The position numbers were made by a program, and so were the translations under genes. Of a stretch of DNA of 64,000 bases, positions 8,161 to 37,287 are shown in pieces. Position 1 is the stretch's first letter; the number at the start of each line of letters is the position of its first letter. This DNA is from Schmidtea polychroa (taxonomy: Eukaryota): NCBI GenBank assembly GCA_044892525.1, contig CM097888.1, positions 51,398,001-51,462,000 of the forward strand. Direction: 5' to 3'. The notes beneath the pieces were generated by a model. The model saw nothing but the letters and a program-made list of their open reading frames with translations. It ran no database searches and was not told where the DNA came from.

Positions 8161-8313
8161 TTTATAAACAATATTCAAATCAAAAATATTTTTAATTTAA
8201 ACTAAATTAAAACTTAAAATTACTATAATAATTAATTTGAAGGAAAACTGATTAAAATCATAAAATATTAAATATTTGTATTAGTAATAAATTTAACTAT
8301 TAAACCAATAAAC

Positions 8314-9024: not shown

Positions 9025-9599
9025 CTACAAATAAATAAACACATATCCGAAAATCATAATAATTATAAAATAAAGAATATTAAATCGCATTAGGATATTT
9101 TTATAATGAAATATAATATAAAAATTTATTAATTACTCAAATAAATTATTACTAATTGTTGTGTTTATAAAGTAAGTGTCTAATCAAATTTTTTCCATTG
9201 ATTTTAAACAAATTACTTTCAAATATATTAAATTTTAGTTTTGTTTGATTAAAAATTAAAATTCATTTTATATTATCAGTTTTTCATTAATTTTGTTATA
9301 ACTAATTTGTTTAGTTTTTAATCACAAAATAATTATTATTTTAGTTATAATACGAAATCAAACATTTCTAAATAATTAATTATAATTTGAAATTTTAAAA
9401 CACAGTAATTGTCAAAAGTACTGCATTCACCCATCAACCTTAGCTTTTTAAGGTCAACCATTTGAGATACTTACATGACTCTTCAATCATACGATAAGGT
9501 ATATTTTAAATTGACGATAAACTGAAAGTTTAATAGTTAAAGTGGATAGAGCTGTTCGTCGAGCGGAATTCATGATTGAAAATTTCCCATGTAACTAAT

Positions 9600-11480
9600 G
9601 ATTCCATAACTGTATATGCCAAATTCGTAAAATCGGTGTTTACAATCGTTTTCCTAGGTCAAGTTAGATATTCCTGCATGATCATTTTTAAATTTACGCA
9701 TTTCTGCACTTACTTTACTTGCTTTAACTTTAGATTCATCTACGAATATATCGTCTATGTATGAACTTATGCTATTCTTGATTGATTCATTGCTGTTCAA
9801 TACGTTATTCACAATCTCTGTCATTATCGTTAGCGCGATATTCAATCCAAATCCCATTCTCGTAAGCGCATATCTCTTCCCATTAACCATACAAGATTGA
9901 TATCGCCACATGCTTTTATCCACGTGTTTTTACATATATCATATATGATATATGCATCAGATAAATCTAACATTGCAAATTCTTTACTTAAACATCTCCA
10001 TGATTGTAATTTTTCAGAACAGATATCTGCATTCCCACTATATACATCAATATATTTATTGATACTCCTAAAGTCAAATACTGGACGCACTTTCGCTTTA
10101 TTTAACTGAATTATACCATAAATAGGTACTGATCCGATCGGTTTGCCCATTGTTTTCTCGTCGTAATCAACTAGATAGCTGTTAGATATCCAAGAATTTA
10201 ATATAAGCATCGTCTCCTGATCCTTACTACAATTATCATAAAAGTTTGAATTTCTATTAGGTAGAAATTTCGGCGGCTCTGACTTCCAATCCCATTTGAC
10301 AATCCATTTCTCGTTTTCAAATCTCGCAGAAAAATTTTCCTTCAAAATTTCTGACATACTACTACTAGAGCACGCTACGTGACAAGGTGCTTCTTCACAA
10401 CCGAATATAGCTTCTTTATTCAATCGAACTCCACCAAACCTATTAATAGCATTCACTCCTAAAATTACATCATAATTGGATACTAGTTTCTCGGTATATT
10501 AAACAATCAATATTAAATAACTTATCTCCAACCCATATATCAACTTTACTTCGCTCACCATATATGATTGAACCATCAAGCATCGCTACCGCAGTCATAG
10601 ATTTTCGTGGATTTCCTTTTACTATAGTGGTAGTGCTGCCCGAATCAACTAAACATGCTTTTACATCACCATTTACTTTTAGAAGTTTCACATATTCACA
10701 ATTCTTGGGGCCACCTTTGATCTTTTCCCGACTTGCAAAACCTTGAAATATGTCCCATAATACCGCATTTTGCACATCTGATGTTGCGTCTTTCTGGACA
10801 GTATCTTACCACATGATTAGCACTATTGCATATATAGCATTTTCGATTGGCTTGTCTTCCACTATCTGGTCTTGGTACTACTACTGCAACCGTTTCATTG
10901 TCATAAATTTGATGACTTGCGATTTTCTTTGCTTGAGCAACTAACTCATTCATTGTTGACGCTGTTGACATCTTTAGTTGATTTGACAAATCACTTGGTA
11001 AGCTATTTACAAAAAATCGGATCAGTAGATCACCTGAACATTCCAACAGTGACCTTAATTCATTTACATGGACATCCAAGTTATCACCCATTAATAACTT
11101 TTTCTGTAAAAGTTTCGTAAAAGCTTATTGCTCGCTCATACCGAAGGTTTTCAATAATTCCTTCTTCAGCATACCAAAATCCATTGTCGTGTTGCTTTTC
11201 TTTAACTGTTTGAAAACTGCATAAGATTGCCCTTCAAGTAAAAATGGTATTACATTCATGACATTTTCACATTTTTGGCTTCCAAAATAATTTCGAGTTT
11301 GTCGAACCATTCTTCCACATCTGTATTTTTGCCATCGAATTTTCCAACATTTTCAATTATGATCTTGTTGATTTCCATTGCCCGGATAACTTGTAAGACA
11401 AAACGTTTTTCAAATTCTATTTTTACCACATTTTCATAATATTAAAACAACATTAATTGTTTAATATTACCTTATTACCT
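9600..11480 (-). mobile_element. Degenerate Ty3/gypsy-type LTR retrotransposon (gag-PR-RT, multiple frameshifts)
   Basis: gag start MEINKIIIENVGKFDGKNTDVEEWFDKLE (ATG 11368); two CCHC knuckles (CYICNSANHVVRYC, CAKCGIMGHISRFC); protease CLVDSGS; RT motifs KVRPVFDFRSIN, LDLSDAY, TRMGFGLN and YIDD. A putative LTR end ..TCTTACA|AGTTAT lies at 11392. Confidence 0.85.
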
Positions 11481-11483
11481 CAC

Positions 11484-12450
11484 TCACTTAGTGGAACATG
11501 CAATTGAACAGGCCCTTTTAAAATCAGACCAATTTGAAATTCCAGTAGAGAGAATATTAAGGTTCAAGAAGAGGATGGCAGGGGAAAAACTCAGAGATAC
11601 TGGACTCACTCTGCAAGAAGAAAACAATAGAGCGATGCTGGAGTGTATCGATTGTTTCCATTCTGAACTCCAGACCAGATCAACAGTGATCAAGGAAGTA
11701 GTAGATATGTTTGAGGTTGTTCAAGCCAAGAGTCTTCTATCAGCAACTGAAGATGAGTTGCTGGTGTCAGTTATTAAATTAACCACTTTCTATGATGAAT
11801 TATCCAAAGATGAGCTTTTAATGGAAATACCAAGGCTAAGAAGACATATGAAGGCCATTGTAAAGATATTGATTTACAAAAAGCCAAAGACTGGGCAATA
11901 TTTGATGTTCTGAAATTCATAGCTGAATGGGACTTTCTTGAATCTCTCCCAATACTCTCACTGAGCCTACAACAATTTCTTACGATCTGTCTGTCTGTTG
12001 CTTCATGTGAGAGGAGCTTTTCAAAACTGAAACTCATAAAGAACTATTTACGCTCAACCATGGGACATTCAAGACTTTTAATCTGGCTCTATTATCAATT
12101 GAAAGTGATATGATGATAGATATTGATTTTGATGGTGTGATTGACACGTTTGCAGCCTTGAAGATCAGAAAGGTAAACTTTTAAATAAAATAAAGTTTAA
12201 TGACATTAATGTTAAATAACGATAACTTAACTTTGGTTTACCTGAAGTAGTAAAGTTATATTGTTCAATTTGAATATGTTTTCTTTTTCTGCCCTTATTT
12301 GACTTATTTTACAAAAATTACTATATTCCATTATAATGATTATATATGGTCTAGTACAGGAACACTCGGAAGACCATGGTGATTGAAGTCTAGAGGGCTG
12401 ACACCAAAAGTTTACCGCACTGGGTGATACCAACCCCAGCAACGCCACTG
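11484..12450 (+). mobile_element. 3' remnant of a hAT (ZMYM1-like) transposon with dimerisation domain and right TIR
   Basis: After a frameshift the frame reads LPILSLSLQQFLTICLSVASCERSFSKLKLIKNYLRSTMGHSRLFNLALLSIES. The terminus GGGTGATACCAACCCCAGCAACGCCACTG ends at 12450. Confidence 0.85.
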
Positions 12451-12459
12451 TTTCCATCA

Positions 12460-13549
12460 TCTTTATGCGACACGCTAGACCTCATTTTTGGTGATTAGTT
12501 AACGAAGTTTCCAATCAGAACCGATTTTCCGACATTTTCTTTTTATTAACATTCATGATTATGATACGTCGCCTCACACAATAGTAGTGAAATCATGAAA
12601 CTCTCTGAAATTCAGTTTGGTCAGTGTCATCATGGTATTTATCTCTTGTGATCATCTTCCCAAGACAAAATTTTCATTCTCATACGCTATCAGCGACGAA
12701 CCCGCCTCTGACGGATCCAACCGGCTGGTGCTTAAGACTTTCGAGGACCCCACCAGGAGAAATACACGAGGCATCTAACCATCGGGAACCCTCTGAACTT
12801 CCTTGGACATAAAAGGAAAATCTTTAAAATAAAATCCTGACTATCAAATAAATATGATAGTTATCACATATTACAAATATAAATTGTTGTGAGAAAAAGA
12901 GGTTTATCCTTTTCAAATTTTTAATATTTAGATATAATATACATGATTAGAAATAACATGACATAAATCAAAAAAGTTTACCAATTGAATTCTCAATGTT
13001 TCCCAAACGAAATATGAATTAATAATCAAAACAGACTTCGGACTAGAAGGTTGCTAAATAGTTGGAAGTTCTATAAAGATTAAAAAATGGCATTATTGAA
13101 ATTTCTTTAAGTAATTCTTACCTATAAAGATTAAAAATTGACATTAGAAATGTAATTGAGATGGCCTTATTTATAGTATTTCCACGACTGCTTCGTTCAA
13201 TTGGAATTAAGCAGGTGTGTATTTTGGTGAATTTCTATTTTATTTTCAAATTTAGCTTTATTTTCTGTGTTTTCTTATTTTTTATTTTTTTATTTAATTA
13301 ATTTCGTTTTGATCTGCTTTATTATATTTTACCTTGGTTAGATAATGGTTACCTTGGTGTCTTTTCTTAATTTATTTATTAATTTTTACTTTTAGTTATC
13401 ATACTTATTTATTTAAATCATTTATTTTTTATATATTGTTAAACCATTTTAAATTACATTTTCTAATGCGAAAATACTTATCTACGAAAATTTAGAATCT
13501 GTACTCGATAAAAAGAAAATGAAAAGAAATTTCTAATTCTTGCCCAACA
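12460..13549 (-). mobile_element. Truncated third copy (C) of the giant TG..CA solo-LTR-like family
   Basis: Starts TGTTGGGC at 13549. A-rich tract, CCAAT (13200-13204), TATAAATA (13168-13175) and a duplicated 24-nt mini-exon with a GTAAG donor follow, as in elements A and B. Left part is cut at the hAT end (12450). Confidence 0.65.
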
Positions 13550-13779
13550 ATTTGCAGTTCTTAAAGCCAAGAAAGGAAAGTTCTGATTTAGTCAAGATTT
13601 AATATGACATAAAATTTAATATTAAAATAACAATTAAAAAACTAATATATTTTCTATGTAGTTCTTAGTTCTTAACTTCTTACAATCCGACCTTGTATTA
13701 ATTTTTACCTCTACTGCCTTTGTGAATATAGAACATATATTTATAAACGTTACTAAGGATTCTGTGTGTTTCCGTTATT

Positions 13780-13877
13780 TGGCACTGGTGGACTCGGAGG
13801 AGGTATATGGGATATTGTGAGGGAGGTGACGCTATGAGTTACCACACTGTGTGACACCAACCCTATTGACGCCACTG
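13780..13877 (+). mobile_element. hAT MITE right end
   Basis: GTGACACCAACCCTATTGACGCCACTG terminus, same family as the 12450 end. Confidence 0.55.
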
Positions 13878-22590: not shown

Positions 22591-23846
22591 TAAAAAGTTT
22601 TTTTACTTATATTATTTTGCTCTTTTTAGTCTTCTCAAATCTTACAACCGATCTTCTGCCAAAACCAATCTTTTTCATATGTGCATTTTTTACGCAGAAC
22701 ATATTTTTTCTCCTGGATCGCGACTTTTAATGAATTTTTCAGTAATGCAATACATAGATGGAATATAAAATTCCGTCATACTTGCGTTTTTCACCTTAAA
22801 CAGATCGGTTAAGTATAATTAAGTTCTGAAAGTAGTAAAATATTGTGTTGTCATAAAAAGCAAGCATGTATACAAAATTTCAGCGAAATTGGATTATTGA
22901 AAGTGCTACAAAATTCGATCGAAAGACTTGACCCGAACATACAAGAAACCAAGTTAAGAAAAGCGTGGTAAAAACTCTTTTTAGAAATGTCTCTTAAAAT
23001 CTAATGTTAAGTATTGTCTTTGGTTCTCTTTTCGTAACCCAACCGTATTTCCTGTCAAGTATTATGGCACCTTTTTTACAGCGCAATCGGTATTACTGAC
23101 TATTCTAGCTATTCTGGTAGAAAAGTACAAGACTGGCTGACACATACGAACCATTTATTGAAAAAAATGTAAAAATCACATTTTGCGAAAAATGAGTTAA
23201 ATAATAATAATTTTAAAGGAAATTGCAATTAAACAGATTTAATTAATTTTTCTGAAAAGGTTATTTTCTACTACTTTCAAAATAAATCACTGCTGGGGCA
23301 CCACTCTGTTGACCATCAATATTTCCATTTTCGTCCTAGGGGATGAGTGCCCATTTATGATTACGCTTATCGTTACTTTGTCAACCCTGAGTAGAGCCCC
23401 ACATAACCTGTACTCCAACATAGCACCTGTGAATTACTTCACGTTGGAAATGTGCTATGCCGACGAGACGCCAGTAAGCAGGTGAGCCCCTACCTTAGGA
23501 CTACTCCTTACTGAGGCCTCGACTTCCTACCTCTGACCGCCGATAGAAGGACTTACGTCTACTCAGTTCATCACCCCATTTCAACACCTTTCGTTTGGAT
23601 TGCACACTGATCAATACCTCTCGAATGCTAGAAACTGTTAACACTATTTCCCTAACTTCATGCCGAATCTTTTATAAAAAGAAAATATATCAGGACGAAA
23701 ACTATTTATTTTTTACATTGATATACAGAAAACATCGACGATTTACACAGCAGATATACAAGGATAAGAGAAACGCAAGAGTAAAAACGTGATTAGTTCG
23801 ATTTCAGATTTCTCCAGTGGATCATGTCAGGTTCACGGGAATGTTC

Positions 23847-24596
23847 TCACTTTTCCCACTCTGTATCTGCCAGCAGTTCTTCCAGGTCAAAGAATTCGGA
23901 GGCGTTTTCCTCCCATGTCACGCCGGCGGCTGAGATAATCCGTGCCGGAATTCCTGTCGTTAGATCGATGGATATATGCGAATTGTCAGTATTGATGGTC
24001 GTTCCCGTTGAGGGGTCGTTGGATTTCGTTGATGCTCGTTCGCGCTGCCTCTGCTTGCGCTTGACTCGAGATAATTGCTTACGCTTGGGTTTCGAAGTGG
24101 ACGGATTATTTTGTGATACAGCTGATGAAGACATGATATTGGGCTGTACTTTGCTAATCCTGGTGATGACAAGGTCCGGACATTTGGGAGAGAGCTCGGT
24201 CTCTACGCAATCGTGACAAGACTTCGTGAACGGAGATGAAGACTTGGCGGAGGTATCGTGATGCACGGGGAAGATGTTGTCTGCTTCATTTATCGGGATT
24301 TTGACAATTCGTCGCGTTGTTGCTGCTTGTAAATACACCTTGTGCAACGCTTCTGATTGTTCTTTTATCAGGCTTCTTTGTGCACGACTCTCAGAAATTA
24401 GAGCGTCACGACAATGCTCGCTTCGATATAATTTTTTATTGACTTCCTTCATTTGAGCGGGGGTAAACCAGGTACCCTCCAACTCGTCTATCTTCTTCTT
24501 ATAACGCCCTATCTGAGCTTGTAAGTCCTTGATTATCATATTCTTATCTGAGCAGGAAAAACAGGGCCGGAGAACAGGTTTTGTATTTGGTAGCAT
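23847..24596 (-). CDS. Uncharacterised 249-aa CxxC/coiled-coil protein of element A
   Basis: Intact ORF, about 52/80 identical to the 35348 ORF in the N-terminal domain. Acceptor TCTTCTTACAG 9 nt before the ATG; AATAAA at 23705-23710. Confidence 0.8.
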   Translation of the reverse strand: MLPNTKPVLRPCFSCSDKNMIIKDLQAQIGRYKKKIDELEGTWFTPAQMKEVNKKLYRSEHCRDALISESRAQRSLIKEQSEALHKVYLQAATTRRIVKIPINEADNIFPVHHDTSAKSSSPFTKSCHDCVETELSPKCPDLVITRISKVQPNIMSSSAVSQNNPSTSKPKRKQLSRVKRKQRQRERASTKSNDPSTGTTINTDNSHISIDLTTGIPARIISAAGVTWEENASEFFDLEELLADTEWEK

Positions 24597-26460
24597 GTCT
24601 GATAGCTGTAAGAAGAGATAAAACTAAATAGAATGAAACTAAATTTGCAAAGTCATCATTCCGACACAATCGTGGGTCTCTTTATTAGAACTTCCTACAG
24701 CAAGGAGACGGAGTCAACTAGCAAGAGGAACTCCCCCCCCCGACCATAAATCTTTATCCCTTTGCGATTTATTAGTTATAGGAAAATCAACTAGTAACAC
24801 ATACTGTTGCTTAACGAATGTAGTACCTTGTTGTTGAAAAAATGAAAATTCTATATTTGTGAAATTCGTGAAAATTAGGTTTTTCCTTGAAAATGTTAAA
24901 TCGTATTCAAGAGCTCAACGCCAAATATAAGACTACTTTACAAAAAGGAAATTATACAATATGAAGATTTGATAGATTTTTGCGATTAATCAATTTTAAT
25001 TAATTATTATTGGTGAATATTAAATTTAAAAGTTCTAAAATTTAGACCTACAACGTACAATCACACGCCATTCGTTATCTATGGTAAATTGCAATCCCTC
25101 AGTACTGATGACTGTTATCTAATAATATGAATACCACATGGTGTGTACCGGATGGAATCTCTCACTACAGCCATTTATCACGAATTTACCTAGTGTCAAA
25201 TCAAATATTCTGAGAAAAAGCTAATGGTAGCAACATATGGGAAATTCTCGGATAATGATATTAGATAATGCTGTATTGACGCTAATGAGTGTCCACATGC
25301 GAATTCTACTGCTGGAACTAGGACTACGTGTATTTGCGTGTGTGTGCATGCACGGGCGGGCAGCTGCTCTATGAAATTCTATCGGTTAGCGTTGTAGATT
25401 TGGATTTTTCAGATATTACTGCACTGAGTTGATTTCTATCGTACGCGAAAATTGAAAACACGAAATTCCCTCTCGTCGCTCGTTGGATATATTATTTTCG
25501 TGGATGATTTATGGAGCCATTTAGGACATATTTATCGATCTTTACTCTCTGACAATGATCATTTTGCATTTGCTCAACAGAAGCGTGTTTTATACACTGA
25601 CTCGTATGCAGGTAGTTCGTGAACATTTTTCATTTTATGTAATCTCAATTTTATGATATTGCTATATTTTATTAAATGGTTACCATACTACCGGAGTAAG
25701 TATCTTAACACGAGATTCATCATCAGAGCCAATTTCGAGTGGTCATTTCGAAAGGAAAAATTAAAAATCAGATAGATGATGTTTGCCCTACTGATAGAAT
25801 TGAAAGATCTGGATTTATAAATTTTCAAAATGCGAGAATTATGGAAAGATTGCAGATGCGAAGCATCTAGACTCGCTCATTCACTGTGAATCACCACTAC
25901 TACTTTTCCTATACATTAAAAACGATTTTGCTTCTTACTTTTGACTTTTCTATATGCATTTTAAGTGACCTTCAGCGTTTGGACCCGTGAAGAAGCCACC
26001 ACATTTCGGCCCAATCTAGCTGCGTGATTGAAAAACTTCATGTCCACCGGCTGAGCTCCCGAAGGTACCTCACACCATGACATGAAGTTTCTCAACTCCA
26101 CGTTACTCAAGAAGTTGAAAATCATAAACTAATAATTCATAAAGCTAATTATAAACTGTGAAAACTATTATAGGTACTGAAATCATTTACTTAATTACAA
26201 TCATTAATAGGGATCAAATGAAAAGAAAACTATTCAAATTAAAATTTTAATTATTCATTAAATAATCATAATTACTATTAACTTTAAAAACAAACAAAAT
26301 GTAGAATAAAATCTCCTTACTATCGAGTGTGGGCTTAGTCGAAAATATAGTAATCGTCTTTCAAAAATTGTCTGATGATTTCGGATCCTGTGGTTCTTCG
26401 AATATCGATTTCTACTGTTGATTATGCTTTAGCTTTGAATTGGTTGTGAGTCGCTGCTAT

Positions 26461-26590
26461 CTATGAAGTTTTTTGAATTAACCGTCTCATAATTTAAAGT
26501 TTCTTACCTATGAAGTTTTTTGAATTAACCGTGATTTTTATGATTTTGGTGCCTGCTTATATATCAATTTTTCATTTATGCGGACCAATC
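26461..26590 (-). promoter_or_regulatory. Element A promoter with duplicated 25-nt first exon and 47-nt mini-intron
   Basis: GATTGG, TATATAAG, then ACGGTTAATTCAAAAAACTTCATAG|GTAAG...ACGGTTAATTCAAAAAACTTCATAG| (repeats 26508-26532 and 26461-26485). Confidence 0.65.
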
Positions 26591-27935
26591 AAAATTGAGT
26601 ACCGCTTAATTTTTTGAATTAATTTGTTTTTTCCTATTTCTTTAGGTATTTTCCTTATTTTTCCTATTTTTATTATACCTTTTATTTATTTCTTAAATTC
26701 CTTATTATTTGTTGCATTTTTCGTTATCTTATTCGTCATCTTTTTACCTTATTTTTAATTTTCTCATTTTTATTTTTTGTTTTAATCCTTATATCGTATT
26801 TTATTGTTTCTTTTATGTCTTGACTTATTTATTTTAAAATTTGTTGTCTTATTTTATTTTATTCACATCCTATCTGTCTTAATTTCCGACGATTATATTT
26901 TCGACTTAGCCCAACATCACTCATACATATTTACTTCCTAAACAAATTTTTTGTTCATCAACTAGTATTTTGTTTTTTCATTTAATATGAATTTTCGGCA
27001 AAGACTTGTTTGAAAATTTTATTTGAAAACGGTAATGAAAAAATCCGTATTAACTATGCAACAAAATATTGATCGATAATCTAAAAAAGAAATGAAGATA
27101 AAAGAAAAAAAACATTTCACACCAAATATTTTTGAACAAAAGATTATCAGACTAACTCAAAACGAATTTTTGGAATTTTTAATCAACATCTATCTACCAC
27201 AGGGTGCAAATTTTAGGATTGATACAATATTTTTATTATTCAACTCGTTACACTCAAAGTAATCTCTTTTATTTTTCAGTATTTGCAAATAATCTACTTT
27301 AATTAAGAAAATGAAATAACTTATTTTCATTATTAATATCCTCTTTTTCAATTTTGGTCTGTAATTTATTATATCACTTTAGTAAAAGATCAAATATGAA
27401 TGTTGCTCACAAGTGTTTGTATTGTTCATAACTTAATTATTTTATACTCCTCGACCAGAATGACTAAACATTATTATTATATTGATAAATTTTATAATAC
27501 AAACCCGTTATTATAATCAAGAGTGAAAACAAGTGGTATTTAAAAAAATTACAATAGGCATAGACGAAGTGAATAAATAAATAAATTACTTTGCTCAAAT
27601 AAATCAAGCACAGACTATTTTCAATTTATTTTTCTTGATTTTTCTAAGTTTTTCAGAAATTCTGGTCATTGTCTTGATCAAATGGTCTATTTTGTTGAAC
27701 TATATATTTCAACGGGATAACAAAATTAACGTTTAATTGTTAATTTTCGAGCTATTTTCATTCATAATTTTATTTAGGGTTGCAAGTATTGCTTCGATGT
27801 TGACCCACAGAAAAAGAATTTTGATGTTATATAAAGACGGTGTAATAAAACATCTACTTACATCTACACAATATATTAAATTTATTTTAAGAAAATAAGA
27901 AAAAATAAAAATTCAAAATTCATCATACCATATAT

Positions 27936-29111
27936 AGACTGCCAGTCTCCAGATGATTAAGCTATCAGTGGTATCGACTGTCTCAACTTAGAACCCAGAT
28001 CACTTGGACCTAGATTATTGGTAGTCACTATATAAACCAAATGGTAAATTTGAATTAACCCATTGACACGATTCGAAGAATTATCATAGAAAGCAAAATT
28101 TCTGGGTCAAAATGACGATGTTGATATCCTTAATGTTATTTATCTTCATTCTTTTAGATTATATCAGTTAATGTTTTGCTTTAAAATAAACATTGATTTA
28201 AACTTGATAAAAACTATTGGGAAGATTTTAGTTTTAAATATTTAAATTCAAAATAATTTCTACTTAAAGTTGTAAATAATAAAAATTATTATTTCTGTAA
28301 AATTAATAATTAAAATTCTTAACTCAGCAGAAAATATATATTTGTTTAAATTCTCTGTTATATTCATTTCAAATTGACATTTTTAAATAAGCATTTCGAT
28401 GGTATCAGAAATTGGAATTATTAAATAAATCATTTCGACTTTTTTCTTTGAGTTCTATTGTATTAATAATAAATTTTATAATTTAAATAATTCTGAATTA
28501 TGATTTATTTTTACCCTGAATATTTAATATTTTTAAAAGTATCATTTTATATACAATTTAAGCATTTTAAAGATTAATTACGATGCTACGTTTATTTTAT
28601 ATTAATTATTATTGGCATTAATAAATATATCGATATGAAATTGTAAAAATGGTGGCGATCGTGTTTTATTTTATCTTACATTTAGTTATTAATGAATAAT
28701 ATTTTGTCAATTAAATTTATAAATGGTTACTGTTACATTATGAGTTTTAAATAGCTTTTTAAATTTGAAATATTAATGTTTATATCGATATTAGCATTTA
28801 TTAATCGTTATTTCTTGCCACTTTAATCGTTACTGGAAATACTGCTAAAGTACAGGGCCAAAATGTCAACCGCTAAGTGTATATTTCCCATCGTTTTCTG
28901 TGAAATATAAAATATTGAGAAATCAATATATACAAAAATCTAAAGCCGAGTGGGACAGCTAGGAATTTCAACATCATCTTGTTTACCCGGACACTCCAAA
29001 TCGGGTGAATTGGAAACTTATCATATTATAGATATGACCACATATAATCTTGGTTCTAAGTTGAGGCAGTCGACACCACCGACAATCTAATCAGCTAGAG
29101 ACAGGCAGTCT
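27936..29111. mobile_element. Non-autonomous TIR element (~1.18 kb, ~65-bp diverged TIRs)
   Basis: AGACTGCCAGTCTCC...GTCTCAACTTAGAACCCAGAT at 27936 is the inverted counterpart of ATCTTGGTTCTAAGTTGAGGCAGTCG...ACAGGCAGTCT ending at 29111. No TSD resolved. Confidence 0.65.
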
Positions 29112-30701
29112 GAATAATATATAATGAATTTTTTTATTTAATTTACTTATAATGAATTGAATATATTGCGTAAATATAAATAGATGTTTTCATTAACCTC
29201 TTACTAATCCTCTTTCTACAACAACAAAATTCTTTCTATCGGTCAACAGCGAGGAGTTAATGTGTTACCAAGTAGTCAAGGTCAATTTTAATTGTTTCAA
29301 ACAATGGAATTATTAATGAAAATAATTATTTGTAATATAATGGGAAAATGTTTAGATGGATTCGAGGATTTACGATAACGGCTATATCTCAGTCCGAAAC
29401 TCTTTTTTGAATACATATTTTTAACATATTTATTTTAATCTTAATGATTATATTTCATTTTCAAAACGATTGAGAATAAAACAAATTTCAGTTTCTAAGT
29501 TATAATATTTCTTATTGAAAAATTATTGTAAATATCAAAATGAATATATTTATTAATAATTAAGGTTTCATTCTCTAAAAATTAATTCTAACACCAAAAT
29601 ATCGATGTTATGGAATTAAATCATAAAATGTTGGGACTTATATCAGATGAAATTGTTAATTATATGAATATTGATCCGATGCTGATCCGACACAGAGCAT
29701 AGATGGTATAGACAGCAATCTAGGCCTGATTTATCATTTTATGTAAAACAAACTTTATGCAATTTTTATGTGTAATTAATTCATTGTTTCATTCAATGGC
29801 GTTTATGTAGGTTTATCCGATAAATTTTATTGTACAAAATACGTACTGGTTTTCATCTATTCCTTTATTATTGTATTTAATCGACCACTTTGGCGACCCC
29901 TGGTTTGGGGCATTAAATGAGAGTAACAAAAATACAAATGTTTTTAATGCAATAATCTTATGATAATACAAATGACTATTTTTGAAAAATTTATAGTTAT
30001 CTAATCTAAACTAAGTCTACTATTCTACGCTAATTCAAAATTTCTGAAATAATTATAAATTTTTAACATATCCAAACCAGTTTGAAACCGCAATCATCTG
30101 GTTACCTTTCCTTATTTGTTTGCATTGGAGCTTTCTTATTTTCCTTCCTGAAAATTCAAACTTTTTTGCAAGAAAATTTTGTGATCACGTAATGTATGTT
30201 TAACCATATTTTAAATTTCTGTATAACTTCTCAAAGGCTGGGAAATCTGATTGAATAATAGATCAAAGATCCGTTCTTGTGTCTTCATTATTTATAAGGT
30301 TCTGAAAGGGAGTATATTGGACAATTTAGAACTTTTTATATCTATTGTTCATAATAAACATGAATTTTTAAAATAATAGTTCCATTCCAGTGAAATAGAC
30401 AATTAATTCTGAAAAATTGATGCATTTAAACAATTAATAAATCTTATGAAAATTACACTTTGTGTAGTACATCAGCCCCCCCCCCCCAAAAAAAAATAAT
30501 TGGGGAATTTATGCTCATTCATTAAAGAAATATCAGTTTTTTTATATTTCTTCATATTCTAGCCTATCAAATCATTTCATTAAATAAAAGTATATTTACA
30601 ACTATGTTATTGGTTAAAAATAATGCTTTAAATTGTAGAAATTAAACAAAATGGATAAAAAAAGAATTGTTAATACTAAATTGAATAAAAAGAATTTATG
30701 G

Positions 30702-31844
30702 ATGTCTAATCTGACTTATTCCGATTTAAAGGCCCAATGGAAGTTTATAGACAGCCCCTGGGATTTATTGGTACCCTGTGAGGAAGTCAAATTAAAACAA
30801 ACTAATGAAAATAATAATTTGTTTTGTGTTTTCAGTCAAATAATGGGATTTTGGTCGGCATTCATTTTCCCAGTGATTTCAATTTTTGGTATTTTCCTTA
30901 ATATTTTAATTATTTACATTTTTAACTTTAAATTCCGAGATAAAAGTCGGCAGTATATTTATTTATCGTTTCTAGCAGCCTTTGATTCGTTCAATCTTAT
31001 CTGCTCGGGATGGATGTGGATATTTTTCGCTAAGGGTTTACCATATGCGTCGTCGGGAGTTCTTTATTTTTTCACTTACAATCAAGGAGTGATACCTTGT
31101 AAACTTCACCGCTACTTTACGGCAGCAATTTCTTGTTCAGCGATTTCAATTTTTCTGTTGACCTCGATTGATAGATATTTTGCAATATTTTGGCCGCTAA
31201 AATGTTTGAATATCCCACTGAAAAGATCTTGGCAATATTCATCGATGGTCGTTTTGTTGAGCTTTATAGCGATGAGTCCTTTTATTGTCTACATGGACCA
31301 TAGTCAGACTGGAAACCATAAAACGATTTGTTGGCTAGAAGCATCAAAAGATAAAAAATCTTTAGGAATGTTTTTGCAGATTTATAATATTCTTTTTTCA
31401 TTTTGTGGTTCCTTTCAAACTTTGGCGATTATTTTATTTAATTTAAGTTTATTTTATCAAGTGAGTAAAGGGCAAAGGTTAAGAGAACAAATACAAGCAG
31501 CAAATTGTAAGAATATCAGAAAAGAAATATCTGCTTGTGTGATTCTTTTAGTTTTATCAGTTCTTTTTGCAGTTGGCTCATTACCAACTTCCATATCGTT
31601 CATTTTAGCTTTCCTCATGCAAAATGATACAGGACCAGATGCTGACCAGCGCTTGAGATTCATTTACAATATTGGTGATGTTGGTTGGCATTTATACATG
31701 GTACAACAATGCACAAACGGGTTGATCTATTACTGGAAAATGTCTCATTTCAGAAATATTGTGAAGAAAATATTCAAAATTCCCATTTGGAATAAAATAC
31801 CCAAAAGTCAGAGCACACTGAATGCACATTTATCAGTTCGATGA
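30702..31844 (+). CDS. Intronless orphan 7TM GPCR paralogue (380 aa from the conserved MSNLT start; upstream in-frame ATG at 30651)
   Basis: MSNLTYSDLKAQWKFIDSPWDLL start, canonical DRY, colinear with the other paralogues. Confidence 0.9.
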   Translation: MSNLTYSDLKAQWKFIDSPWDLLVPCEEVKLKQTNENNNLFCVFSQIMGFWSAFIFPVISIFGIFLNILIIYIFNFKFRDKSRQYIYLSFLAAFDSFNLICSGWMWIFFAKGLPYASSGVLYFFTYNQGVIPCKLHRYFTAAISCSAISIFLLTSIDRYFAIFWPLKCLNIPLKRSWQYSSMVVLLSFIAMSPFIVYMDHSQTGNHKTICWLEASKDKKSLGMFLQIYNILFSFCGSFQTLAIILFNLSLFYQVSKGQRLREQIQAANCKNIRKEISACVILLVLSVLFAVGSLPTSISFILAFLMQNDTGPDADQRLRFIYNIGDVGWHLYMVQQCTNGLIYYWKMSHFRNIVKKIFKIPIWNKIPKSQSTLNAHLSVR

Positions 31845-32039
31845 AAAATATGTTTGGTGGACTTTTTATTGCACACATTTATCATTTTTATATTGAATTG
31901 AGATTAGAATAAATATTACCTCTCGTTTTGACATAATACACCTGTTTGCATGGAATAAAAGTATCTATAATATAAAAAAATCAATACTCTTATATTATTA
32001 AAACAAACAAACTTACCTTTGCACAGAATTTTGATGTAG

Positions 32040-32040
<1 letters not shown>

Positions 32041-32124
<84 letters not shown>
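32041..32124 (+). repeat. (ATT)28 microsatellite
   Basis: 84 nt of perfect ATT repeats, adjoining the distal end of the inverted Penelope pLTR fragment. Confidence 0.97.
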
Positions 32125-32277
32125 GAATAAATAGTTAAACATACATGGCAATGATTTAATTATAAGATAACGCCAATCAAACATTTTTTTCACGATTAAT
32201 TTCGACAGTTTTCCTGTCATCATCAGGTGGGATATAATACTCATTAAATAAAGGATTTTAAACAAATTTAATTATAT
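32125..32277 (-). mobile_element. Inverted pseudo-LTR fragment of a Penelope-like element
   Basis: Reverse complement of 32232-32270 matches 37250-37287 (AATTTGTTTAAAATCCTTTATTTAATGAGTATTATAT), the 3' UTR of the GIY-YIG ORF. Contains a hammerhead motif. Confidence 0.75.
32191..32229 (-). ncRNA. Minimal type I hammerhead ribozyme of Penelope pLTR type
   Basis: Minus strand CAC-CUGAUGA-U-GACAG-GAAAA-CUGUC-GAA-AUUAAU-C-GUG: stem I CAC/GUG, stem II 5 bp, palindromic stem III AUUAAU, cleavage triplet AUC. Confidence 0.8.
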
Positions 32278-32776
32278 TGTTGGGCTAAGTTTTGAAGTAG
32301 AGAAAAACTGGGTTAAATCGGGAAACGAGCCGCAAAAAATATAAACGAAATATAATAAAAATAAATCCCCATCAAACCTCAATAATAAATAAGGAAACAA
32401 TAAAATACCCATAAAAAGAAATAAGAATAAATGATAAATAAATAAAGCCCTTAAGAATTAGAAATAGGACATAAGAGAAATGAGTTAAAGCACAATAAAT
32501 AAAGTAAAAATAGAATAAGCAAAAAGGTAAGAGAAAATAAACGAGAAATTAAAGCAATAAATAAAAAATAAAAATATCTTTAAGTTTAATTAAAACAAAA
32601 ATTGCATTATGATAAAGTAGCAGTGAACCCGCAGAAAAAATAGGAGAAAAATAAGAAAAATAGGAAAAATAAATAAAATAATAATAAGAAATAAGTTAAG
32701 TTATTAAAAGCTAATATATTATAATAAAAACATAAAATAATAATAAATAATAAAAATTACAACCTAACTAAGTCCT

Positions 32777-32892
32777 GATTGGACGGAAAATAGTATATAA
32801 GAAACGCTAAAAATCAGTAGAGTACCACTTTAATCAAAAACTCTACAGGTAAAATTTGTTAAGTTTGACCACTTTAATCAAAAACTCTACAG
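32777..32892 (+). promoter_or_regulatory. Element B promoter with duplicated 25-nt first exon and 44-nt mini-intron
   Basis: GATTGG 32777-32782, TATATAAG 32794-32801, ACCACTTTAATCAAAAACTCTACAG at 32824-32848 and 32868-32892, GTAAAA donor at 32849. Confidence 0.65.
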
Positions 32893-35347
32893 ACTCTACA
32901 GGTTTCAAGACTTTATTCACAAACTACTACAGAGGACTAATCCAAAGAAGACTAATTTGAATTGAGGAAGAAACATACAGCGAACTATTAACAGCATTAT
33001 TCCGGAAAACCTTAGCCAATTTAACCCAGTTATTTAATCTCAAGGTATGGTAGGATATTTTTAGGTTTGATTTTATGATAGATATAATGGAATTTAATAA
33101 ATATTTATAATTGATATTAAATTTTGTAAATAACAAGGAAAATTTGTTCAATAAATTTATTTAAAAACAGAACCTGCCTTTCTTCATGGTGCCGACGACT
33201 GTACCTTCTGATGATTTCAAGTATGATGCCAAATGGAGAGAGTAGCCCCGAGGAATATTATGATATGTAGCCAAGAGATGTTGCGAGGATATTGGATCAG
33301 GAGCAAGCGATAATAATGGATACGATGCCAATACTGTAAGGGAATATTGGGTTGGAAAATGAGAAAGCATCATACTTGGAACTCAGACGATATGGTCGTC
33401 GGTAATTTGATTCATTTACTTGATTATTATTTGTTCCATTTTTATTATTTATATCTGAAATTTGTTTTTAAATTGCTGAATGCGAAAGAGTCGACTGGTC
33501 CCTCGTGATCGTCCGAGAATGGCGGCAGAGATGATTGCCTTCTTGGGTGTGTTATGAGGGGTGTAGAGGCTCAGTAGGTTAGGATAACAGGCTGAAGGAT
33601 GGAATTTCTTCACCGAGCTCGCATCGTTCTTAGTAAGTTCCATAGCTTCAATAAGTCACCTCGATACTTCTAATAATAGCGGAGGAGATTTAAGTTGAGA
33701 GCCGAAGACAGTTCGGAGTTGAGATTGACAATTTCATCAACGTATTAAGAATCCACATAGTTCGGCGAAATTTCTTCATAACGGTCAACCCGTCAGTCGG
33801 GATAGTGAACGAGAATGTTGTCAACAAAGCTTGGAGTGTAAATCCAGTAAATCTCGTAGAGTATTGTTTTCCTCGGTATACTAGTAGAATCTGAACCGTC
33901 GATATGTTAGCGATGACACCCGTCGACGAATGTACTTTTAAGTTAAGTGATTAGCTTCGAATCGCTGATAAACATCGTCTTCCCTGAAAAGAATGTAAAT
34001 AAGTAGGAGAGGTTATCAGATTACTCACGGATAAATGACAGAAATCGCTGACAGATTTATCAATTGATCACTGACTGAATCGAGGAACCACGATAGGAGT
34101 TATCAGTGACTTGAGAAATGAAATGCCGGCAGATGATAACTGATCGAATTAAATGACCAACGAAGCCAGATAACACCGATAATAAATTTCCACGAGGGAT
34201 AATCTAATTGACGCGCGGGTAGACATTGTCTTGTACTGGCTGCGTAATGATCAAGGCAGATTAAAAATTCTAGCTTAGTTATTGCTCATCGTTTTACTAC
34301 GTACAATTCCAGGGTGATGCTCGTAGAACACTCAGTGATAATTCCAATATATTATGTAACTGCACACACCTACACACTCCATCGTGAATCGTCTCCCAGG
34401 AGGATAGCAGAGTACTCTTGGCATTGGAATTTGGCCGTGATGTCACGATTACATAGTAACCTACTCGTAATTCCCTGAGTTGGTAGGCTGGTGTGTATGA
34501 ACAACAGAGCAGATCGTCTCCACTGCGATTTAATACGACGTCGAATTTTCTCCACTATCACATAGAAATAGACACACATGAAAGCTCAAGGTGGAGATAC
34601 TCCAACAATGCATACCGACTCAGTTAATAAATATAAGAAAATGCACACATCTACAGGTAGGCGTCACTAGGGCGACAGAAGTAGCGCGATTTTTAAAAGA
34701 ATTTTTGGAATTTAAATTATAATATAATTAGCTAATAGTATATATTTAAAGTCCTTTATGTAAATTCGTAATCACAATGCGTCATAAGGAGAGATAAATT
34801 TTTCCTGCGTTCTAGCAATACGGAGTAGGTACAAATTAATAAACTGAAATCCCCAACAATCGGATGCTATTCTTTTCCATTGATTACGAACGTAAATATG
34901 TTTGACTATAGCAGCCGGCTAAAATGCAACGAGTATGAGTTATCCGACCCGAGGGTAAAGATAGATTTTTCATCGAACCAGTTAAAATCGAGGATTCCCC
35001 GTTTTCTACTCTCCATCCTCTTGAATCAATAAATCGATCGGAATGTTGTTTCCTAAATGAGTGAATGAGGAGTGTTGAATTGTGTGAAAACAAGTTGTTT
35101 TATTGTATGCTGTGGCGTGGTATGATGAGTGAAATCTTTGAGTTTAGTGTCTCGATAGAATTTGGAACTAGATATATTTTAACCGTTAAAACGGATTACT
35201 AGAGAAAACTTAGCTGAGACATTAAAAAACATGAAATTTATGAATTAAGACACTTCGTGAAAATTACAGAATTATAACTAATGAATTCTTGTACTGGATA
35301 CCTTAATAAGTATCGCAATTCGGTTTGAACCATGATTAATTTTCTAG

Positions 35348-36109
35348 ATGACAACACCATCCAATAACGCCCAAGAACTTCGTCCGTGTTTCTCTTGCGC
35401 TGACAAGAACTCGGACATCTCTCAACTTCATTTATATATAGGGGCCCTCAAGAAGAGGATAGATCTTTACGAAGGAACGTGGTTCTCCCCGCCACAGATG
35501 AAGGAGGAAAAGGCTAAGATCCTCAGGTTAGAACATTGTAGGGACAGCCTACTAGAAGAAAGCCGATGCCAAAGGCTCACAATAAAAGCACAATCAGAAG
35601 CCCTCCATAAGGTCTACACGGAGGCAGAAATAGCAAAGCGGGTACGCGAATATCCCGTATTGGATGGATCGAATGTCTTTCCTCTCCATCACCAGTCATC
35701 TACCACTCCCACCTCAGCTTGTCGAGGGCACGGTTCCCATCTACCGCCCATCCCAGCCCCAGTGCTGTCAGGATACTTACCTATGAAAGGCGGTCCATCT
35801 GACCCAATTCTGGTCCCGATCCTAGTGGCACCCACAGTATCTACTGCTGTTGGAGGAAATCCGCCATCACGCAAACGCAAACACCCAACTAGGGCCGAGA
35901 AGACTAAGAAACGAAGAAATGCAATGAAGGCGCTCGAGGCTTCTTTGTTCGCAGCGCAGACGACAATAGCAGAGATATCCACCACTCATACGATTCCCTC
36001 GAAAGAAGTTTTCCGTATCATTCCAGCTAACGGCATCAAGTTTATCTCGGATTGTAGATTGCCGGTAGACATCGACGAGTTAATTGCCGACGGAGAAAAC
36101 TTCAACTAA
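35348..36109 (+). CDS. Uncharacterised 253-aa CxxC/coiled-coil protein of element B
   Basis: Intact ORF homologous to 23847-24596. TTTCTAG|ATG acceptor context; AATAAA at 36308-36313. Confidence 0.8.
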   Translation: MTTPSNNAQELRPCFSCADKNSDISQLHLYIGALKKRIDLYEGTWFSPPQMKEEKAKILRLEHCRDSLLEESRCQRLTIKAQSEALHKVYTEAEIAKRVREYPVLDGSNVFPLHHQSSTTPTSACRGHGSHLPPIPAPVLSGYLPMKGGPSDPILVPILVAPTVSTAVGGNPPSRKRKHPTRAEKTKKRRNAMKALEASLFAAQTTIAEISTTHTIPSKEVFRIIPANGIKFISDCRLPVDIDELIADGENFN

Positions 36110-36400
36110 AACGGTTCGCGAGTGATCCTGAATGTATTTCGAGTCGTGAATTGACTGATAAACTTCGTTAATATTGTGCATCCTAACCGTCCATATGATA
36201 TTGTATTAATAAGTGTGATGATGTTTGTTTATTTTCATTTCGGTATTAATATATTTTGTCTATTTGGTTCTGTTTTATAAAGATTTTCATATGTTTGGTT
36301 TTTTGAGAATAAAATGGTTCAGTATTACGGAAGGAAAGCTAGTAGGCTAACGGTCGTTCCCTTGGACCAGGATCGAACCAAGACTGAAACATGAATAAGG

Positions 36401-36645
36401 GTAAGTCCTTCTAAGGCACCAGTGAACCTGAACCGCGAGCGGGCTATCAGTAGTCCTAAAATAGGGGCTCACCTGTTAGTCAGCTCCGACCCGTATGGGC
36501 ACTACCAACGTGGAACATCATCACGGGCTCATGCGTGGGAATATGTAAATGATCATTTGGCGTATGCATGGGAGGTGTCTGAGCTAACCAATGCGGTCGG
36601 TATGATAATGGTTGTGTAAGTTTTCTTCTCCCTCATATGCCAACA
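36401..36645 (+). ncRNA. Putative structured cis-RNA module at the 3' end of element B (homologue at 23291-23556, minus strand)
   Basis: Blocks GTAAGTCCTTCTA, AGTAGTCCTAAnnTAGGGGCTCACCTG and CCAACGTG are shared with element A. The flanking helices differ in sequence but keep their pairing. Confidence 0.55.
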
Positions 36646-37287
36646 ATATATAAAAAAAATTTGCCGTACTCAGAAGGCTTTAAGGATTATAAAGTGAAGA
36701 TAAGAAAGCAGTTAGGGAATTTAAACTATAGGATAGTGTCAACTTCATGGAAAGTACGCAATATGTTTATTAATAAGTCAAAAACTCCGGTTGAATTGTG
36801 TTCCGATCTCGTTTATCAGTTTACATGTAATGGATGTAATGCTACATACATTGGAGAGACTTCCCGTCATCTCTGTATTCGAGCTCGAGAACATTGTAGA
36901 CCGAAGTCTTTGACCCATATTGGTGAGCACAATAAGGGCTGTAAAATTAAAATAGGTATGTCTGATTTTAAAATTTTATTAAAAAACTTCGATAATTATT
37001 TGGAACGTGTGATTTGTGAGGCGTTGTTGATAAAATCATTAAATTCGAAAATTAATGTGCAGAATGCAGTAAATACTTGTGTGTTGAGTGTTTTTAAATA
37101 AGCTTTTGTGTATTGTATGTATTGATTGTTGTGTTAAATTAAATAATGAATAAAAATTTTTTAAATTGTTAAACTAAAATTTTAAATGTTAAAGTTTTAA
37201 AAATAATATTTTTTAAAAAATGAAAAAAATTTTTTTTTATATATAATAAAATTTGTTTAAAATCCTTTATTTAATGAGTATTATATT
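36646..37287 (+). mobile_element. 5'-truncated Penelope-like element: GIY-YIG endonuclease ORF (to 37101) plus 3' UTR/pLTR
   Basis: LVYQFTCNGCNATYIGETSRHLCIRAREH...EALLIKSLNSKIN. The listed ATG at 36637 comes from the end of element B, so the ORF start is chimeric. Confidence 0.88.

What the first reader, a model, noticed from the sequence alone, without database searches (positions are those of the whole stretch)
23291..36645. Family of giant (3.6-4.4 kb) solo-LTR-like elements that carry genes inside the repeat
Seen: element A (26916->23291, TSD TCAC) and element B (32278->36645, TSD ATAT) both start TGTTGGGCTAAGT, end in ..CA with only short terminal inverted repeats, and share one layout despite little nucleotide identity. 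The layout is A-rich tract, CCAAT, TATA, mini-exon/mini-intron, decayed antisense coding region, 3' splice site, intact ~250-aa ORF, AATAAA, structured 3' module. A truncated third copy starts at 13549. Established: TG..CA ends with 4-bp TSDs indicate gypsy-type integrase, and giant gypsy elements with multi-kb LTRs (Burro) are known in planarians. Inference: these are solo LTRs with protein genes embedded in the R region, so each recombination product leaves an autonomous expression cassette. The alternative is a new non-autonomous integrase-mobilised class.
Basis: partly seen in the sequence, partly recalled or inferred. Interest (0 to 1): 0.9.

Follow-up and report, generated by a model that had tools for sequence, protein, structure and literature searches.

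The report
Gene-carrying LTR-like mobile elements
Two 3.6 and 4.4 kb mobile elements, with the end sequences and 4-bp target duplications that a retroviral-type integrase leaves, each carry a promoter, introns and an intact conserved 250-aa gene; they are probably solo copies of very long LTRs, which 64 kb of sequence cannot prove.

Summary
Element A (26916->23291, minus strand) and element B (32278->36645, plus strand) both start with TGTTGGGCTAAGT and end in ..CA opposite a 6-9 nt inverted match. Both have perfect 4-bp target duplications. Their DNA is almost unalignable, yet the layout is the same: an A-rich tract, ATTGG, a TATA box, a 25-nt exon repeated at the end of a 44-47-nt mini-intron, an ATG-free second exon, a 1.7-2.3 kb intron, an intact 249/253-aa ORF (39% identity, E 1e-48), and a 3' module with three conserved blocks at conserved spacing. 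A third 5' module starts at 13549.

Two points were not confirmed. The "decayed antisense coding region" is not a shared module: no homology between copies, and a nested hAT fragment in copy C. AATAAA is not positionally conserved; the conserved block is TTTTATAAAGATT.

The solo-LTR reading fits the ends, the duplications and the lack of internal terminal repeats, PBS or PPT. No paired copy exists in the window, and copy C is a rearranged mosaic.

The ORF has no Pfam, PDB or fold relative. Its relatives are gene models fused to many unrelated host domains.

Best reading: solo giant gypsy-type LTRs carrying an accessory gene (about 0.5). Rival: LTR-less elements moved by an integrase.

The parts
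23291..26916 (-). Element A, 3626 bp, TGTTGGGCTAAGT...GCCCCAGCA
26917..26920 (.). Target-site duplication of A, 5' side (TCAC on the + strand)
23287..23290 (.). Target-site duplication of A, 3' side (TCAC on the + strand)
26321..26916 (-). A 5' module. Terminal 13-mer; A-rich tract; ATTGG 26582-26590; TATA 26555-26563; exon 1 about 26508-26532; mini-intron 26461-26507, which ends in a copy of exon 1; ATG-free exon 2 at 26321-26460.
26330..26356 (-). Arm at the end of exon 2 that is complementary to the 5' terminus (26887-26913): 27 nt, 85%.
   Evidence: beats 300 of 300 shuffles
24606..26320 (-). A putative intron 2 (GTAAGG...YAG), about 1.7 kb, 34% GC, content unidentified
23847..24596 (-). 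ORF-X of A, 249 aa, intact
23291..23679 (-). A 3' module. TTTTATAAAAGATT 23666-23679; GTAAGTCCTTCTA 23544-23556; 27-nt block 23479-23505; CCAACGTG 23440-23447; terminal stem reaching the 3' end.
32278..36645 (+). Element B, 4368 bp, TGTTGGGCTAAGT...TGCCAACA
32274..32277 (.). Target-site duplication of B, 5' side (ATAT)
36646..36649 (.). Target-site duplication of B, 3' side (ATAT)
32278..33044 (+). B 5' module. A-rich tract; ATTGG 32777-32785; TATA 32794-32802; exon 1 about 32824-32848; mini-intron 32849-32892, which ends in a copy of exon 1; ATG-free exon 2 at 32893-33044. The arm 33016-33034 is complementary to 32303-32321.
33045..35347 (+). B putative intron 2 (GTATGG...TAG), about 2.3 kb, 37% GC. 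Antisense stop codons are depleted; content unidentified.
35348..36109 (+). ORF-X of B, 253 aa, intact
36273..36645 (+). B 3' module. TTTTATAAAGATT 36273-36285; GTAAGTCCTTCTA 36401-36413; 27-nt block 36449-36475; CCAACGTG 36505-36512; terminal stem.
12850..13549 (-). Copy C, 5' module only: TGTTGGGCAAG; A-rich tract; CCAATTG 13195-13204; TATA 13165-13175; repeated unit ending at 13122 and at 13071. Its 5' end interrupts a hAT 3' fragment.
11446..12450 (+). hAT transposase C-terminal end plus the hAT 3' region, antisense inside C and cut on its 5' side. This is a nested element, not part of the family.
9533..11420 (-). Decayed gag (two CCHC knuckles)-protease-RT of an LTR-type retroelement downstream of C's 5' module, same orientation. 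It is broken and cut off within RT. Whether it belongs to C is uncertain.
13550..13877 (+). Second hAT 3' fragment, 61-71% identical to 12148-12450. It starts exactly at C's terminus, so it is the target that C interrupted.

Best explanation
A and B are solo long terminal repeats of two deeply diverged lineages of a gypsy-type (TGTNR-ended, 4-bp-duplicating) LTR retroelement. Recombination between the two LTRs of an integrated copy would have left each one behind.

Each LTR holds a complete RNA polymerase II gene:
- a promoter (ATTGG, TATA) behind an A-rich tract;
- a 25-nt first exon;
- a mini-intron;
- an ATG-free second exon;
- a long intron;
- a 250-aa ORF (ORF-X).

The ORF-X model has a helical hairpin, a disordered linker and an arginine/lysine-rich helix. 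I infer that it is an oligomerising nucleic-acid-binding accessory protein.

A conserved TATAAA block follows about 165 nt after the stop codon. A 335-390-nt G+C-rich module with conserved hairpins then runs to the 3' end. I read that module as the U5 or R-U5 leader and integrase-binding end.

Shown: the ends, the duplications, the shared layout, the homology and intactness of the ORFs, and the conserved blocks. Inferred: the splice pattern, the promoter and polyadenylation roles, the U3/R/U5 partition, the protein's function, and above all that full-length partners with two such LTRs exist.
For: - Ends TGTTGGGC...CCAACA / CCCAGCA with 4-bp duplications. The pattern matches the intact gypsy in the same window, TGTTAGGG..TTAACA with PBS TGGCGACCC, and the TGTNR rule (PMC2836005).
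- No terminal direct repeats inside A or B and no tRNA. Neither can therefore be a complete LTR element.
- The size fits known giant LTRs: Ogre at 1.9-6.5 kb, and Burro at more than 30 kb total with up to 25 kb of interior (PMC6431247).
- The third 5' module lies 2.2 kb upstream of gag-PR-RT in the same orientation.
- Gene model: TATA-to-donor spacing is 54-56 nt in three copies. Exon 2 has no ATG in either A or B.
- ORF-X: 39% identity. pN is 0.33-0.49 against a saturated pS of 0.83.
- ORF-X relatives (E down to 7e-13) are each fused to a different host domain, as expected of a dispersed mobile gene.
- 3' module: blocks and spacing are conserved, with 13 compensatory pairs in a shared three-hairpin fold.
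Against: - No paired copy and no PBS or PPT context is visible in 64 kb.
- Copy C has no ORF-X and no 3' module between its 5' module and gag. This fits a giant LTR only if the hAT-associated rearrangement deleted them.
- None of 16 ORF-X-bearing gene models is fused to gag, RT or integrase. This is weak evidence, because repeat masking could explain it.
- An R region of nearly 3 kb with introns and its own polyadenylation signal would be unusual.
- The fold of the 3' module is only marginally more stable than shuffles (z -2.1 and -1.2), and the covariation rests on two sequences.
Confidence: 0.5

Rival explanations
1. A and B are complete, LTR-less, non-autonomous elements. Each is a gene cassette bounded only by short integrase-recognition ends, and an integrase supplied in trans inserts it as double-stranded DNA. 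This would be a Ginger-like or wholly new route.
For: - Introns are retained, as in DNA-borne elements.
- Two very diverged copies keep the whole unit intact, with perfect duplications.
- The identical 13-nt terminus despite unalignable bodies points to selection on the ends.
- No paired copies were seen.
- The 4-bp duplication and TGTNR ends are shared with Ginger.
Against: - The inverted terminal match is only 6-9 nt, against 40-270 nt in Ginger.
- The duplicated targets are GTGA and ATAT, not CCGG; only B lies in a TATATA-like site.
- No transposase is encoded, and no Ginger-type gene is seen in the window.
- No excision route is known for such units.
Confidence: 0.2
2. The unit is the whole retroelement. 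Autonomous members would have the same 5' module and intron leading into gag-pol (as in C) and end in the 3' module. A and B would then be derivatives in which ORF-X stands in place of gag-pol.
For: In C a pyrimidine-rich ..AG lies 11 nt before the gag ATG, as before ORF-X in A and B. ORF-X and gag occupy the same position relative to the 5' module.
Against: - Reverse transcription from an internal start cannot restore the 380-520 nt upstream of the start without LTRs.
- C is demonstrably rearranged. A 5'-cut hAT abuts the gag leader, and C's own 3' end is missing.
- YAG after a pyrimidine run is common in 70% A+T DNA.
Confidence: 0.1
3. The true LTR is only the first 590-770 bp (TG...CA with an inverted end, clearest in A). 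The rest is interior sequence of a non-autonomous element whose 3' LTR is reduced to its last bases.
For: In A the 27-nt arm ends ..AGCCCACA at element position 591, like an LTR end. C has ..CACAACA near position 668.
Against: - B has no CA-ended inverted copy. There the arm pairs with terminal nt 29-41, not with the tip.
- No TGG-type primer site follows in A or C.
- The mechanism of LTR formation gives two identical LTRs, and the 3' ends of A and B share no similarity with the 5' module beyond 6-9 nt.
Confidence: 0.07
4. They are ordinary host genes with chance end similarity.
For: The units have a promoter, introns and an intact ORF.
Against: - An identical 13-mer at both 5' ends, inverted 3' ends and perfect 4-bp duplications.
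- A third terminus that interrupts a hAT.
- Relatives dispersed next to unrelated genes.
- GC3 of 0.49 against 0.26-0.32 for neighbouring genes.
Confidence: 0.03

Closest known systems
Solo LTRs of Ty3/gypsy (Metaviridae) retrotransposons with giant LTRs (plant Ogre, planarian Burro/GYPSM1)
   Same: TGTNR...CA ends, a short inverted terminal match, a 4-bp duplication, multi-kb length, a promoter near the 5' end and a poly(A)-type signal near the 3' end.
   Different: A and B hold a spliced, intact, conserved protein gene. No paired copy or interior was seen here. Sequence relationship to Burro was not tested, because no Burro sequence came back from any tool. The gag-PR-RT next to copy C lacks the many extra domains described for Burro (PMC6431247).
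Retroviral LTRs or 3' ends that carry an accessory gene (my own knowledge: MMTV sag in U3, HIV nef overlapping U3, foamy-virus internal promoter with bel/bet genes)
   Same: A protein gene lies inside or overlaps the LTR, so every LTR, solo ones included, carries it. A 3' splice site sits just before the ORF. The protein is arginine-rich and lies next to a structured RNA module.
   Different: No sequence or fold relationship was found. The one Pfam REV match (E 0.0013, one relative only) is most likely compositional. Here the gene has its own TATA promoter and two introns within the repeat.
Ginger1/Ginger2 DNA transposons (PMC2836005)
   Same: TGTNR ends, 4-bp duplications, introns kept.
   Different: The terminal inverted repeats are 6-9 nt, not 40-270 nt. 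Target sites differ. No integrase-like transposase is encoded.
Non-autonomous LTR elements (LARD, TRIM, TR-GAG; ta-TRIM of Echinococcus, PMC4558846)
   Same: No pol; presumably moved in trans; can drive transcripts into neighbouring genes.
   Different: Those have two LTRs with a PBS and a PPT. A and B have no terminal direct repeats.

Membership tests
LTR of a Ty3/gypsy-type retrotransposon (solo LTR) | 5'-TG...CA-3' ends (TGTNR) with a short inverted match | tested here: met
   TGTTGGGC.../...CCAACA in B and ...CCCAGCA in A. The pattern is described in PMC2836005.
LTR of a Ty3/gypsy-type retrotransposon (solo LTR) | 4-6-bp target-site duplication | tested here: met
   GTGA/GTGA for A and ATAT/ATAT for B.
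LTR of a Ty3/gypsy-type retrotransposon (solo LTR) | The same sequence occurs as a direct pair around gag-pol, with a PBS after the 5' copy and a PPT before the 3' copy | not testable with these tools
   The window has no second copy of either element. Copy C lies next to gag-PR-RT but is rearranged.
LTR of a Ty3/gypsy-type retrotransposon (solo LTR) | Promoter and polyadenylation signal inside (U3/R/U5) | tested here: inconclusive
   ATTGG, TATA and a conserved TATAAA block are present at conserved spacing. No expression data were available.
Burro / GYPSM1 giant gypsy elements of planarians | Sequence similarity to Burro LTRs or to its giant polyprotein | not tested
Only the size range is compatible (PMC6431247).
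Ginger DNA transposons | Terminal inverted repeats of about 40-270 bp | tested here: not met
   Only 6-9 nt of inverted match at the ends.
Ginger DNA transposons | 4-bp duplication at CCGG/CCGT (Ginger1) or within RTATAY (Ginger2) | tested here: inconclusive
   The length is met. The sequence is not met for A (GTGA). B (ATAT within TATATA) is compatible with Ginger2.
Ginger DNA transposons | Encodes an integrase-like transposase, or shares ends with an autonomous copy that does | tested here: not met
   ORF-X has no rve or other Pfam domain. The only integrase in the window belongs to the ordinary gypsy at 42645-47852.
Non-autonomous LTR elements (LARD/TRIM/TR-GAG) | Two terminal direct repeats with a PBS and a PPT | tested here: not met
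   No direct repeat joins the two ends of A or B.
hAT transposons | 8-bp duplication, YARNG ends, hAT transposase in sense | tested here: not met
   The hAT domain occurs only in C. It is antisense and truncated, and a paralogous hAT piece is interrupted by C's terminus.
Known RNA families (ribozymes, tRNA-like and others) for the 3' module | Match to an Rfam covariance model | tested here: not met
   No match at gathering score or at E <= 1. No tRNA.

The most novel reading that the evidence does not exclude
These are not LTRs but a new kind of mobile unit. Each would be a complete, intron-bearing gene cassette bounded only by 8-13-nt integrase recognition ends and lacking terminal repeats. 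Some members carry gag-pol (as in copy C) and others carry the small ORF-X. A structured 3' module and a 5'-end/exon-2 pairing would stand in for the functions that LTRs normally provide.
Probability: 0.15. Interest if true: 0.9.

Novelty: new variant of a known kind. Interest (0 to 1): 0.6.

Why it matters
If these are LTRs, every copy of the repeat is a self-contained gene, solo ones included. Each copy has its own promoter, introns, a conserved protein and a conserved RNA module. Recombination, which normally inactivates an LTR element, would then leave behind thousands of expression units. These units could also splice into neighbouring genes. The ORF-X relatives fused to more than a dozen unrelated host domains in public gene models hint at exactly that.

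The finding also gives a concrete case for asking how a retroelement keeps introns and a gene inside its repeat. The copy of exon 1 at the end of the mini-intron, and the pairing between the 5' tip and exon 2, are conserved oddities that bear on this question.

If they are not LTRs, they would be a new class of element moved by an integrase.

Tried and rejected
- Rfam, at gathering score and at E <= 1, and tRNA scans on the elements: nothing.
- ORF-X searches, all without a match or informative result:
  - Pfam.
  - Word-based protein search: no hit.
  - PDB by sequence.
  - AlphaFold model, pLDDT 67.
  - Foldseek against PDB and viral structures: only generic alpha-hairpins.
- Scans for related loci in viral contigs and metagenomes, by protein pattern and by the 27-nt block: nothing.
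- Cluster look-ups gave UniParc numbers only, so no tool names the organism.
- Middle regions of A and B:
  - Piece-wise Pfam on both strands.
  - Comparison with hAT and gypsy proteins.
  - Comparison with the rest of the window.
  - Nothing was found beyond the stop depletion in B.
- An apparent RT-like FVDD motif in one antisense piece of A had no Pfam support and was dropped.
- I briefly took ..GCCAACA at about 13903 for a fourth element end. It is a 7-mer expected by chance, next to a hAT fragment, so I rejected it.
- The idea that the first 591 bp of A is the whole LTR fails in B.
- The Grohme et al. genome paper is not held.
- Exons were examined one by one.

Full report
SETTING

The window is about 30% G+C. 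It holds a cluster of single-exon rhodopsin-type receptor genes at 14516-15658, 19960-21267, 30651-31844 and 39859-41001. The cluster includes an inverted segmental duplication, 14282-16998 against 38524-41237, at 98%. Several mobile elements lie among these genes.

No tool names the organism. A receptor 90% identical to 30651-31844 exists only as an unnamed UniParc entry. Runs of N were left alone.

THE OBSERVATION

Element A runs from 26916 to 23291 on the minus strand, and B from 32278 to 36645 on the plus strand. Both start with the same 13 bases, which occur nowhere else in the window. Both end in CA opposite a 6-9-nt inverted match. Both are flanked by perfect 4-bp duplications: GTGA on A's strand, ATAT for B.

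The 3' ends lie 188 and 170 nt after a 27-nt block that is otherwise unique to the two elements. The ends are therefore not an arbitrary choice of a CA.

Outside the ORF and that block the two DNAs do not align. The order of parts is nevertheless the same, and a third 5' module (C, 13549->12850, minus strand) shares it:
- an A-rich tract, 55-61% A;
- ATTGG or CCAAT, then TATA(T/A)AA;
- 54-56 nt later a GTAAGA or GTAAAA;
- 44-51 nt on, a repeat of the 25-28 nt that precede that GT, ending in YAG.

Given a start about 30 nt after the TATA, the repeated unit is the whole first exon. I take this to be a mini-intron whose 3' end copies exon 1. This is inference; no expression data were available.

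The following 140 nt (A) and 152 nt (B) contain no ATG. About 10% of same-size windows in each element have none. This stretch ends in a GTAAGG or GTATGG donor. The ORF's ATG lies 0-9 nt after a pyrimidine-rich YAG, 1.7 and 2.3 kb further on.

A NEW FEATURE

In A and B the last 10-30 nt of exon 2 are complementary to the element's own 5' terminus. In A the arms are 27 nt at 85%; in B, 19 nt at 89%. Each beats all 300 dinucleotide shuffles. C has no such pair. The sequences differ between A and B, but the position is the same.

THE GENE

The ORFs of 249 and 253 aa are 39% identical (E 1e-48). Synonymous sites are saturated (pS 0.83) while pN is 0.33 in the N-terminal half. The protein has therefore been kept through a long divergence.

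GC3 is 0.49, against 0.26-0.32 in the receptor genes and in the pol of the gypsy element described below.

An exhaustive profile search found 15 relatives (best E 7e-13), and a further search added one. All are UniParc-only gene models. They share the N-terminal 100 aa (GTW..PE...R..L..ESR.QR) and an arginine-rich stretch. Each is fused to a different host domain: transporter, phosphatase, subtilase, ion channel, ribosomal proteins, actin, a hAT transposase and others. None is fused to gag, RT or integrase. That is the signature of a dispersed mobile gene that gene predictors, or real splicing, join to neighbours.

There is no Pfam family and no PDB relative by sequence. The AlphaFold model (pLDDT 67) shows a helical hairpin (17-41 / 48-101), a disordered linker, and a basic helix (182-212). 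Foldseek returns only generic alpha-hairpins. One relative touches Pfam REV at E 0.0013. I read that match as compositional.

My functional guess is an oligomerising nucleic-acid-binding accessory protein. This is inference.

THE 3' MODULE

A conserved TTTTATAAA(A)GATT lies 164-168 nt after the stop codon. Three further blocks follow: GTAAGTCCTTCTA, the 27-mer and CCAACGTG. Their spacings are 123/128, 51/48 and 58/56 nt.

RNAalifold gives the same three hairpins in both elements, with 13 pairs kept through changes on both sides. The last stem closes on the 3' terminus. Stability is only marginally above shuffles (z -2.1 and -1.2). With two sequences the covariation is suggestive, not proof. 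Rfam has nothing.

The TATAAA block could be the poly(A) signal of the ORF mRNA or a second TATA box. The invariant GTAAGT is a consensus splice donor.

WHAT WAS NOT CONFIRMED

The "decayed antisense coding region" is not a shared module. The middle regions of A, B and C have no similarity to each other and no Pfam match on either strand in A and B. Only B shows fewer antisense stops than shuffles, at -3.5 sd.

In C the antisense coding piece is the end of a hAT transposase (Dimer_Tnp_hAT 7e-9; 50% identical to the hAT part of P0011).

COPY C IN DETAIL

C's 5' terminus abuts a second hAT 3' fragment (13550-13877). That fragment is homologous to 12148-12450, and the homology starts exactly at the terminus. 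So TGTTGGGC is a true insertion boundary for a third time.

Inside C, about 400 nt after the 5' module, lies the other hAT copy. It is antisense and cut on its 5' side some 80 nt before a gag ATG.

The gag-protease-RT that follows (9533-11420, minus strand) is decayed. By my count it has one in-frame stop and about four or five changes of frame, one of which may be the natural gag/pol shift. It is cut off within RT, so RNase H and integrase are missing. It is unrelated to the intact gypsy in the window.

C is thus a rearranged mosaic. It links the 5' module to a retroelement interior in the same orientation. It cannot say what originally lay between them.

THE ORDINARY GYPSY FOR COMPARISON

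The element at 42645-47852 (minus strand) has identical 229-bp LTRs ending TGTTAGGG..TTAACA. The primer site TGGCGACCC follows directly after the 5' LTR. It has intact gag and PR-RT-RH-IN ORFs. This is the same end pattern as in A and B.

INTERPRETATION

A and B cannot be complete LTR elements, because they have no terminal direct repeats. A transcript from the internal TATA could not restore the 350-520 nt upstream of it.

Each unit would be an LTR left solo by recombination, of a size known from Ogre and compatible with Burro (PMC6431247). The embedded gene makes it a new variant. From my own knowledge, LTR-borne or LTR-overlapping accessory genes are known (MMTV sag, HIV nef, foamy bel/bet). 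A gene with its own TATA promoter and two introns inside the repeat is not something I know of.

Two partitions fit:
- The alternative: the whole cassette lies in U3, with TATAAA as the promoter and the 3' module as an R-U5 leader carrying the main splice donor.

The tip/exon-2 pairing recalls the 5'-3' cyclisation sequences of yeast Ty1. The copy of exon 1 would let a spliced leader still align with unspliced template, so the mini-intron would be regenerated. Both points come from my own knowledge and are hypotheses only.

Rivals are given with their tests in the fields above. The main one is an LTR-less cassette moved by an integrase in trans. It fails the Ginger criteria on inverted-repeat length and on the encoded transposase, but it is not excluded.

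LIMITS AND SLIPS

The decisive census could therefore not be run.
- To obtain references for piece-wise searches, my scripts printed the bounds of stop-free pieces in decayed regions, including C's gag-PR-RT. I also reasoned over those bounds when counting breaks. That comes close to listing break places, so I declare it here. This report gives counts and outer bounds only. No repaired, joined or consensus sequence was made.

Noticed in passing
42645-47852 (-): An apparently intact Ty3/gypsy element of 5.2 kb. It has identical 229-bp LTRs (TGTTAGGG..TTAACA), a PBS TGGCGACCC overlapping the gag start, a gag of 373 aa with two CCHC knuckles, and a pol of 1126 aa (PR-RT-RNase H-IN), with a 4-5-bp duplication. 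It looks young.
   Followed up: partly
36646-37101 (+): Directly after B's 3' end lies an ORF with a GIY-YIG-type motif (Pfam E 0.003, below the curated cut-off) of the kind found at the end of Penelope-like elements. No reading frame continues upstream of B, so it is probably a 5'-cut remnant at whose edge B inserted.
   Followed up: partly
11446-12450 (+), 13550-13877 (+), 51818-51952 (-): There are three fragments of one hAT family (DUF4371/hAT-dimerisation type). One is interrupted by copy C and one is nested in C. A public gene model (P0011) also fuses ORF-X to a hAT transposase of this type. This could be coincidence or a target preference.
   Followed up: partly
14282-16998 vs 38524-41237: A 2.7-kb inverted segmental duplication (98-100% complementary) carries a receptor gene in each arm. 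The 100% stretch 16777-16998 / 38524-38745 coincides with the N runs 16849-17012 and 38524-38673, so that part mostly reflects N matched to N. The runs were left untouched.
   Followed up: no
6900-8050: A tandem array of about 290-bp units (4 copies, 76-91% identical) lies just upstream of a beta-TrCP/F-box exon (8293-9024, minus strand).
   Followed up: no
2200-4800: Several families of direct repeats of 60-100 nt, at spacings of about 470-950 nt. They look like a decayed tandem or nested repeat region.
   Followed up: no
55342-56865 (+): A 507-aa ORF rich in Lys, Glu and Ser, with no Pfam match. Unidentified.
   Followed up: partly
37306-38094 (+): A 262-aa ORF with no Pfam family, between B and the duplicated arm. 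Unidentified.
   Followed up: partly
27903-28000 / 29047-29144 and 21628-21696 / 22512-22580: Two pairs of inverted repeats (98 nt at 78%, 69 nt at 93%), each about 0.8-1 kb apart. They are possibly small inverted-repeat transposons.
   Followed up: no
ORF-X of A and B (23847-24596, 35348-36109): G+C at third codon positions is 0.49, far above neighbouring host genes (0.30-0.32) and the gypsy pol (0.26). The 3' module reaches 47-58% G+C. The cause is unexplained: RNA structure, expression level, or a foreign origin.
   Followed up: partly
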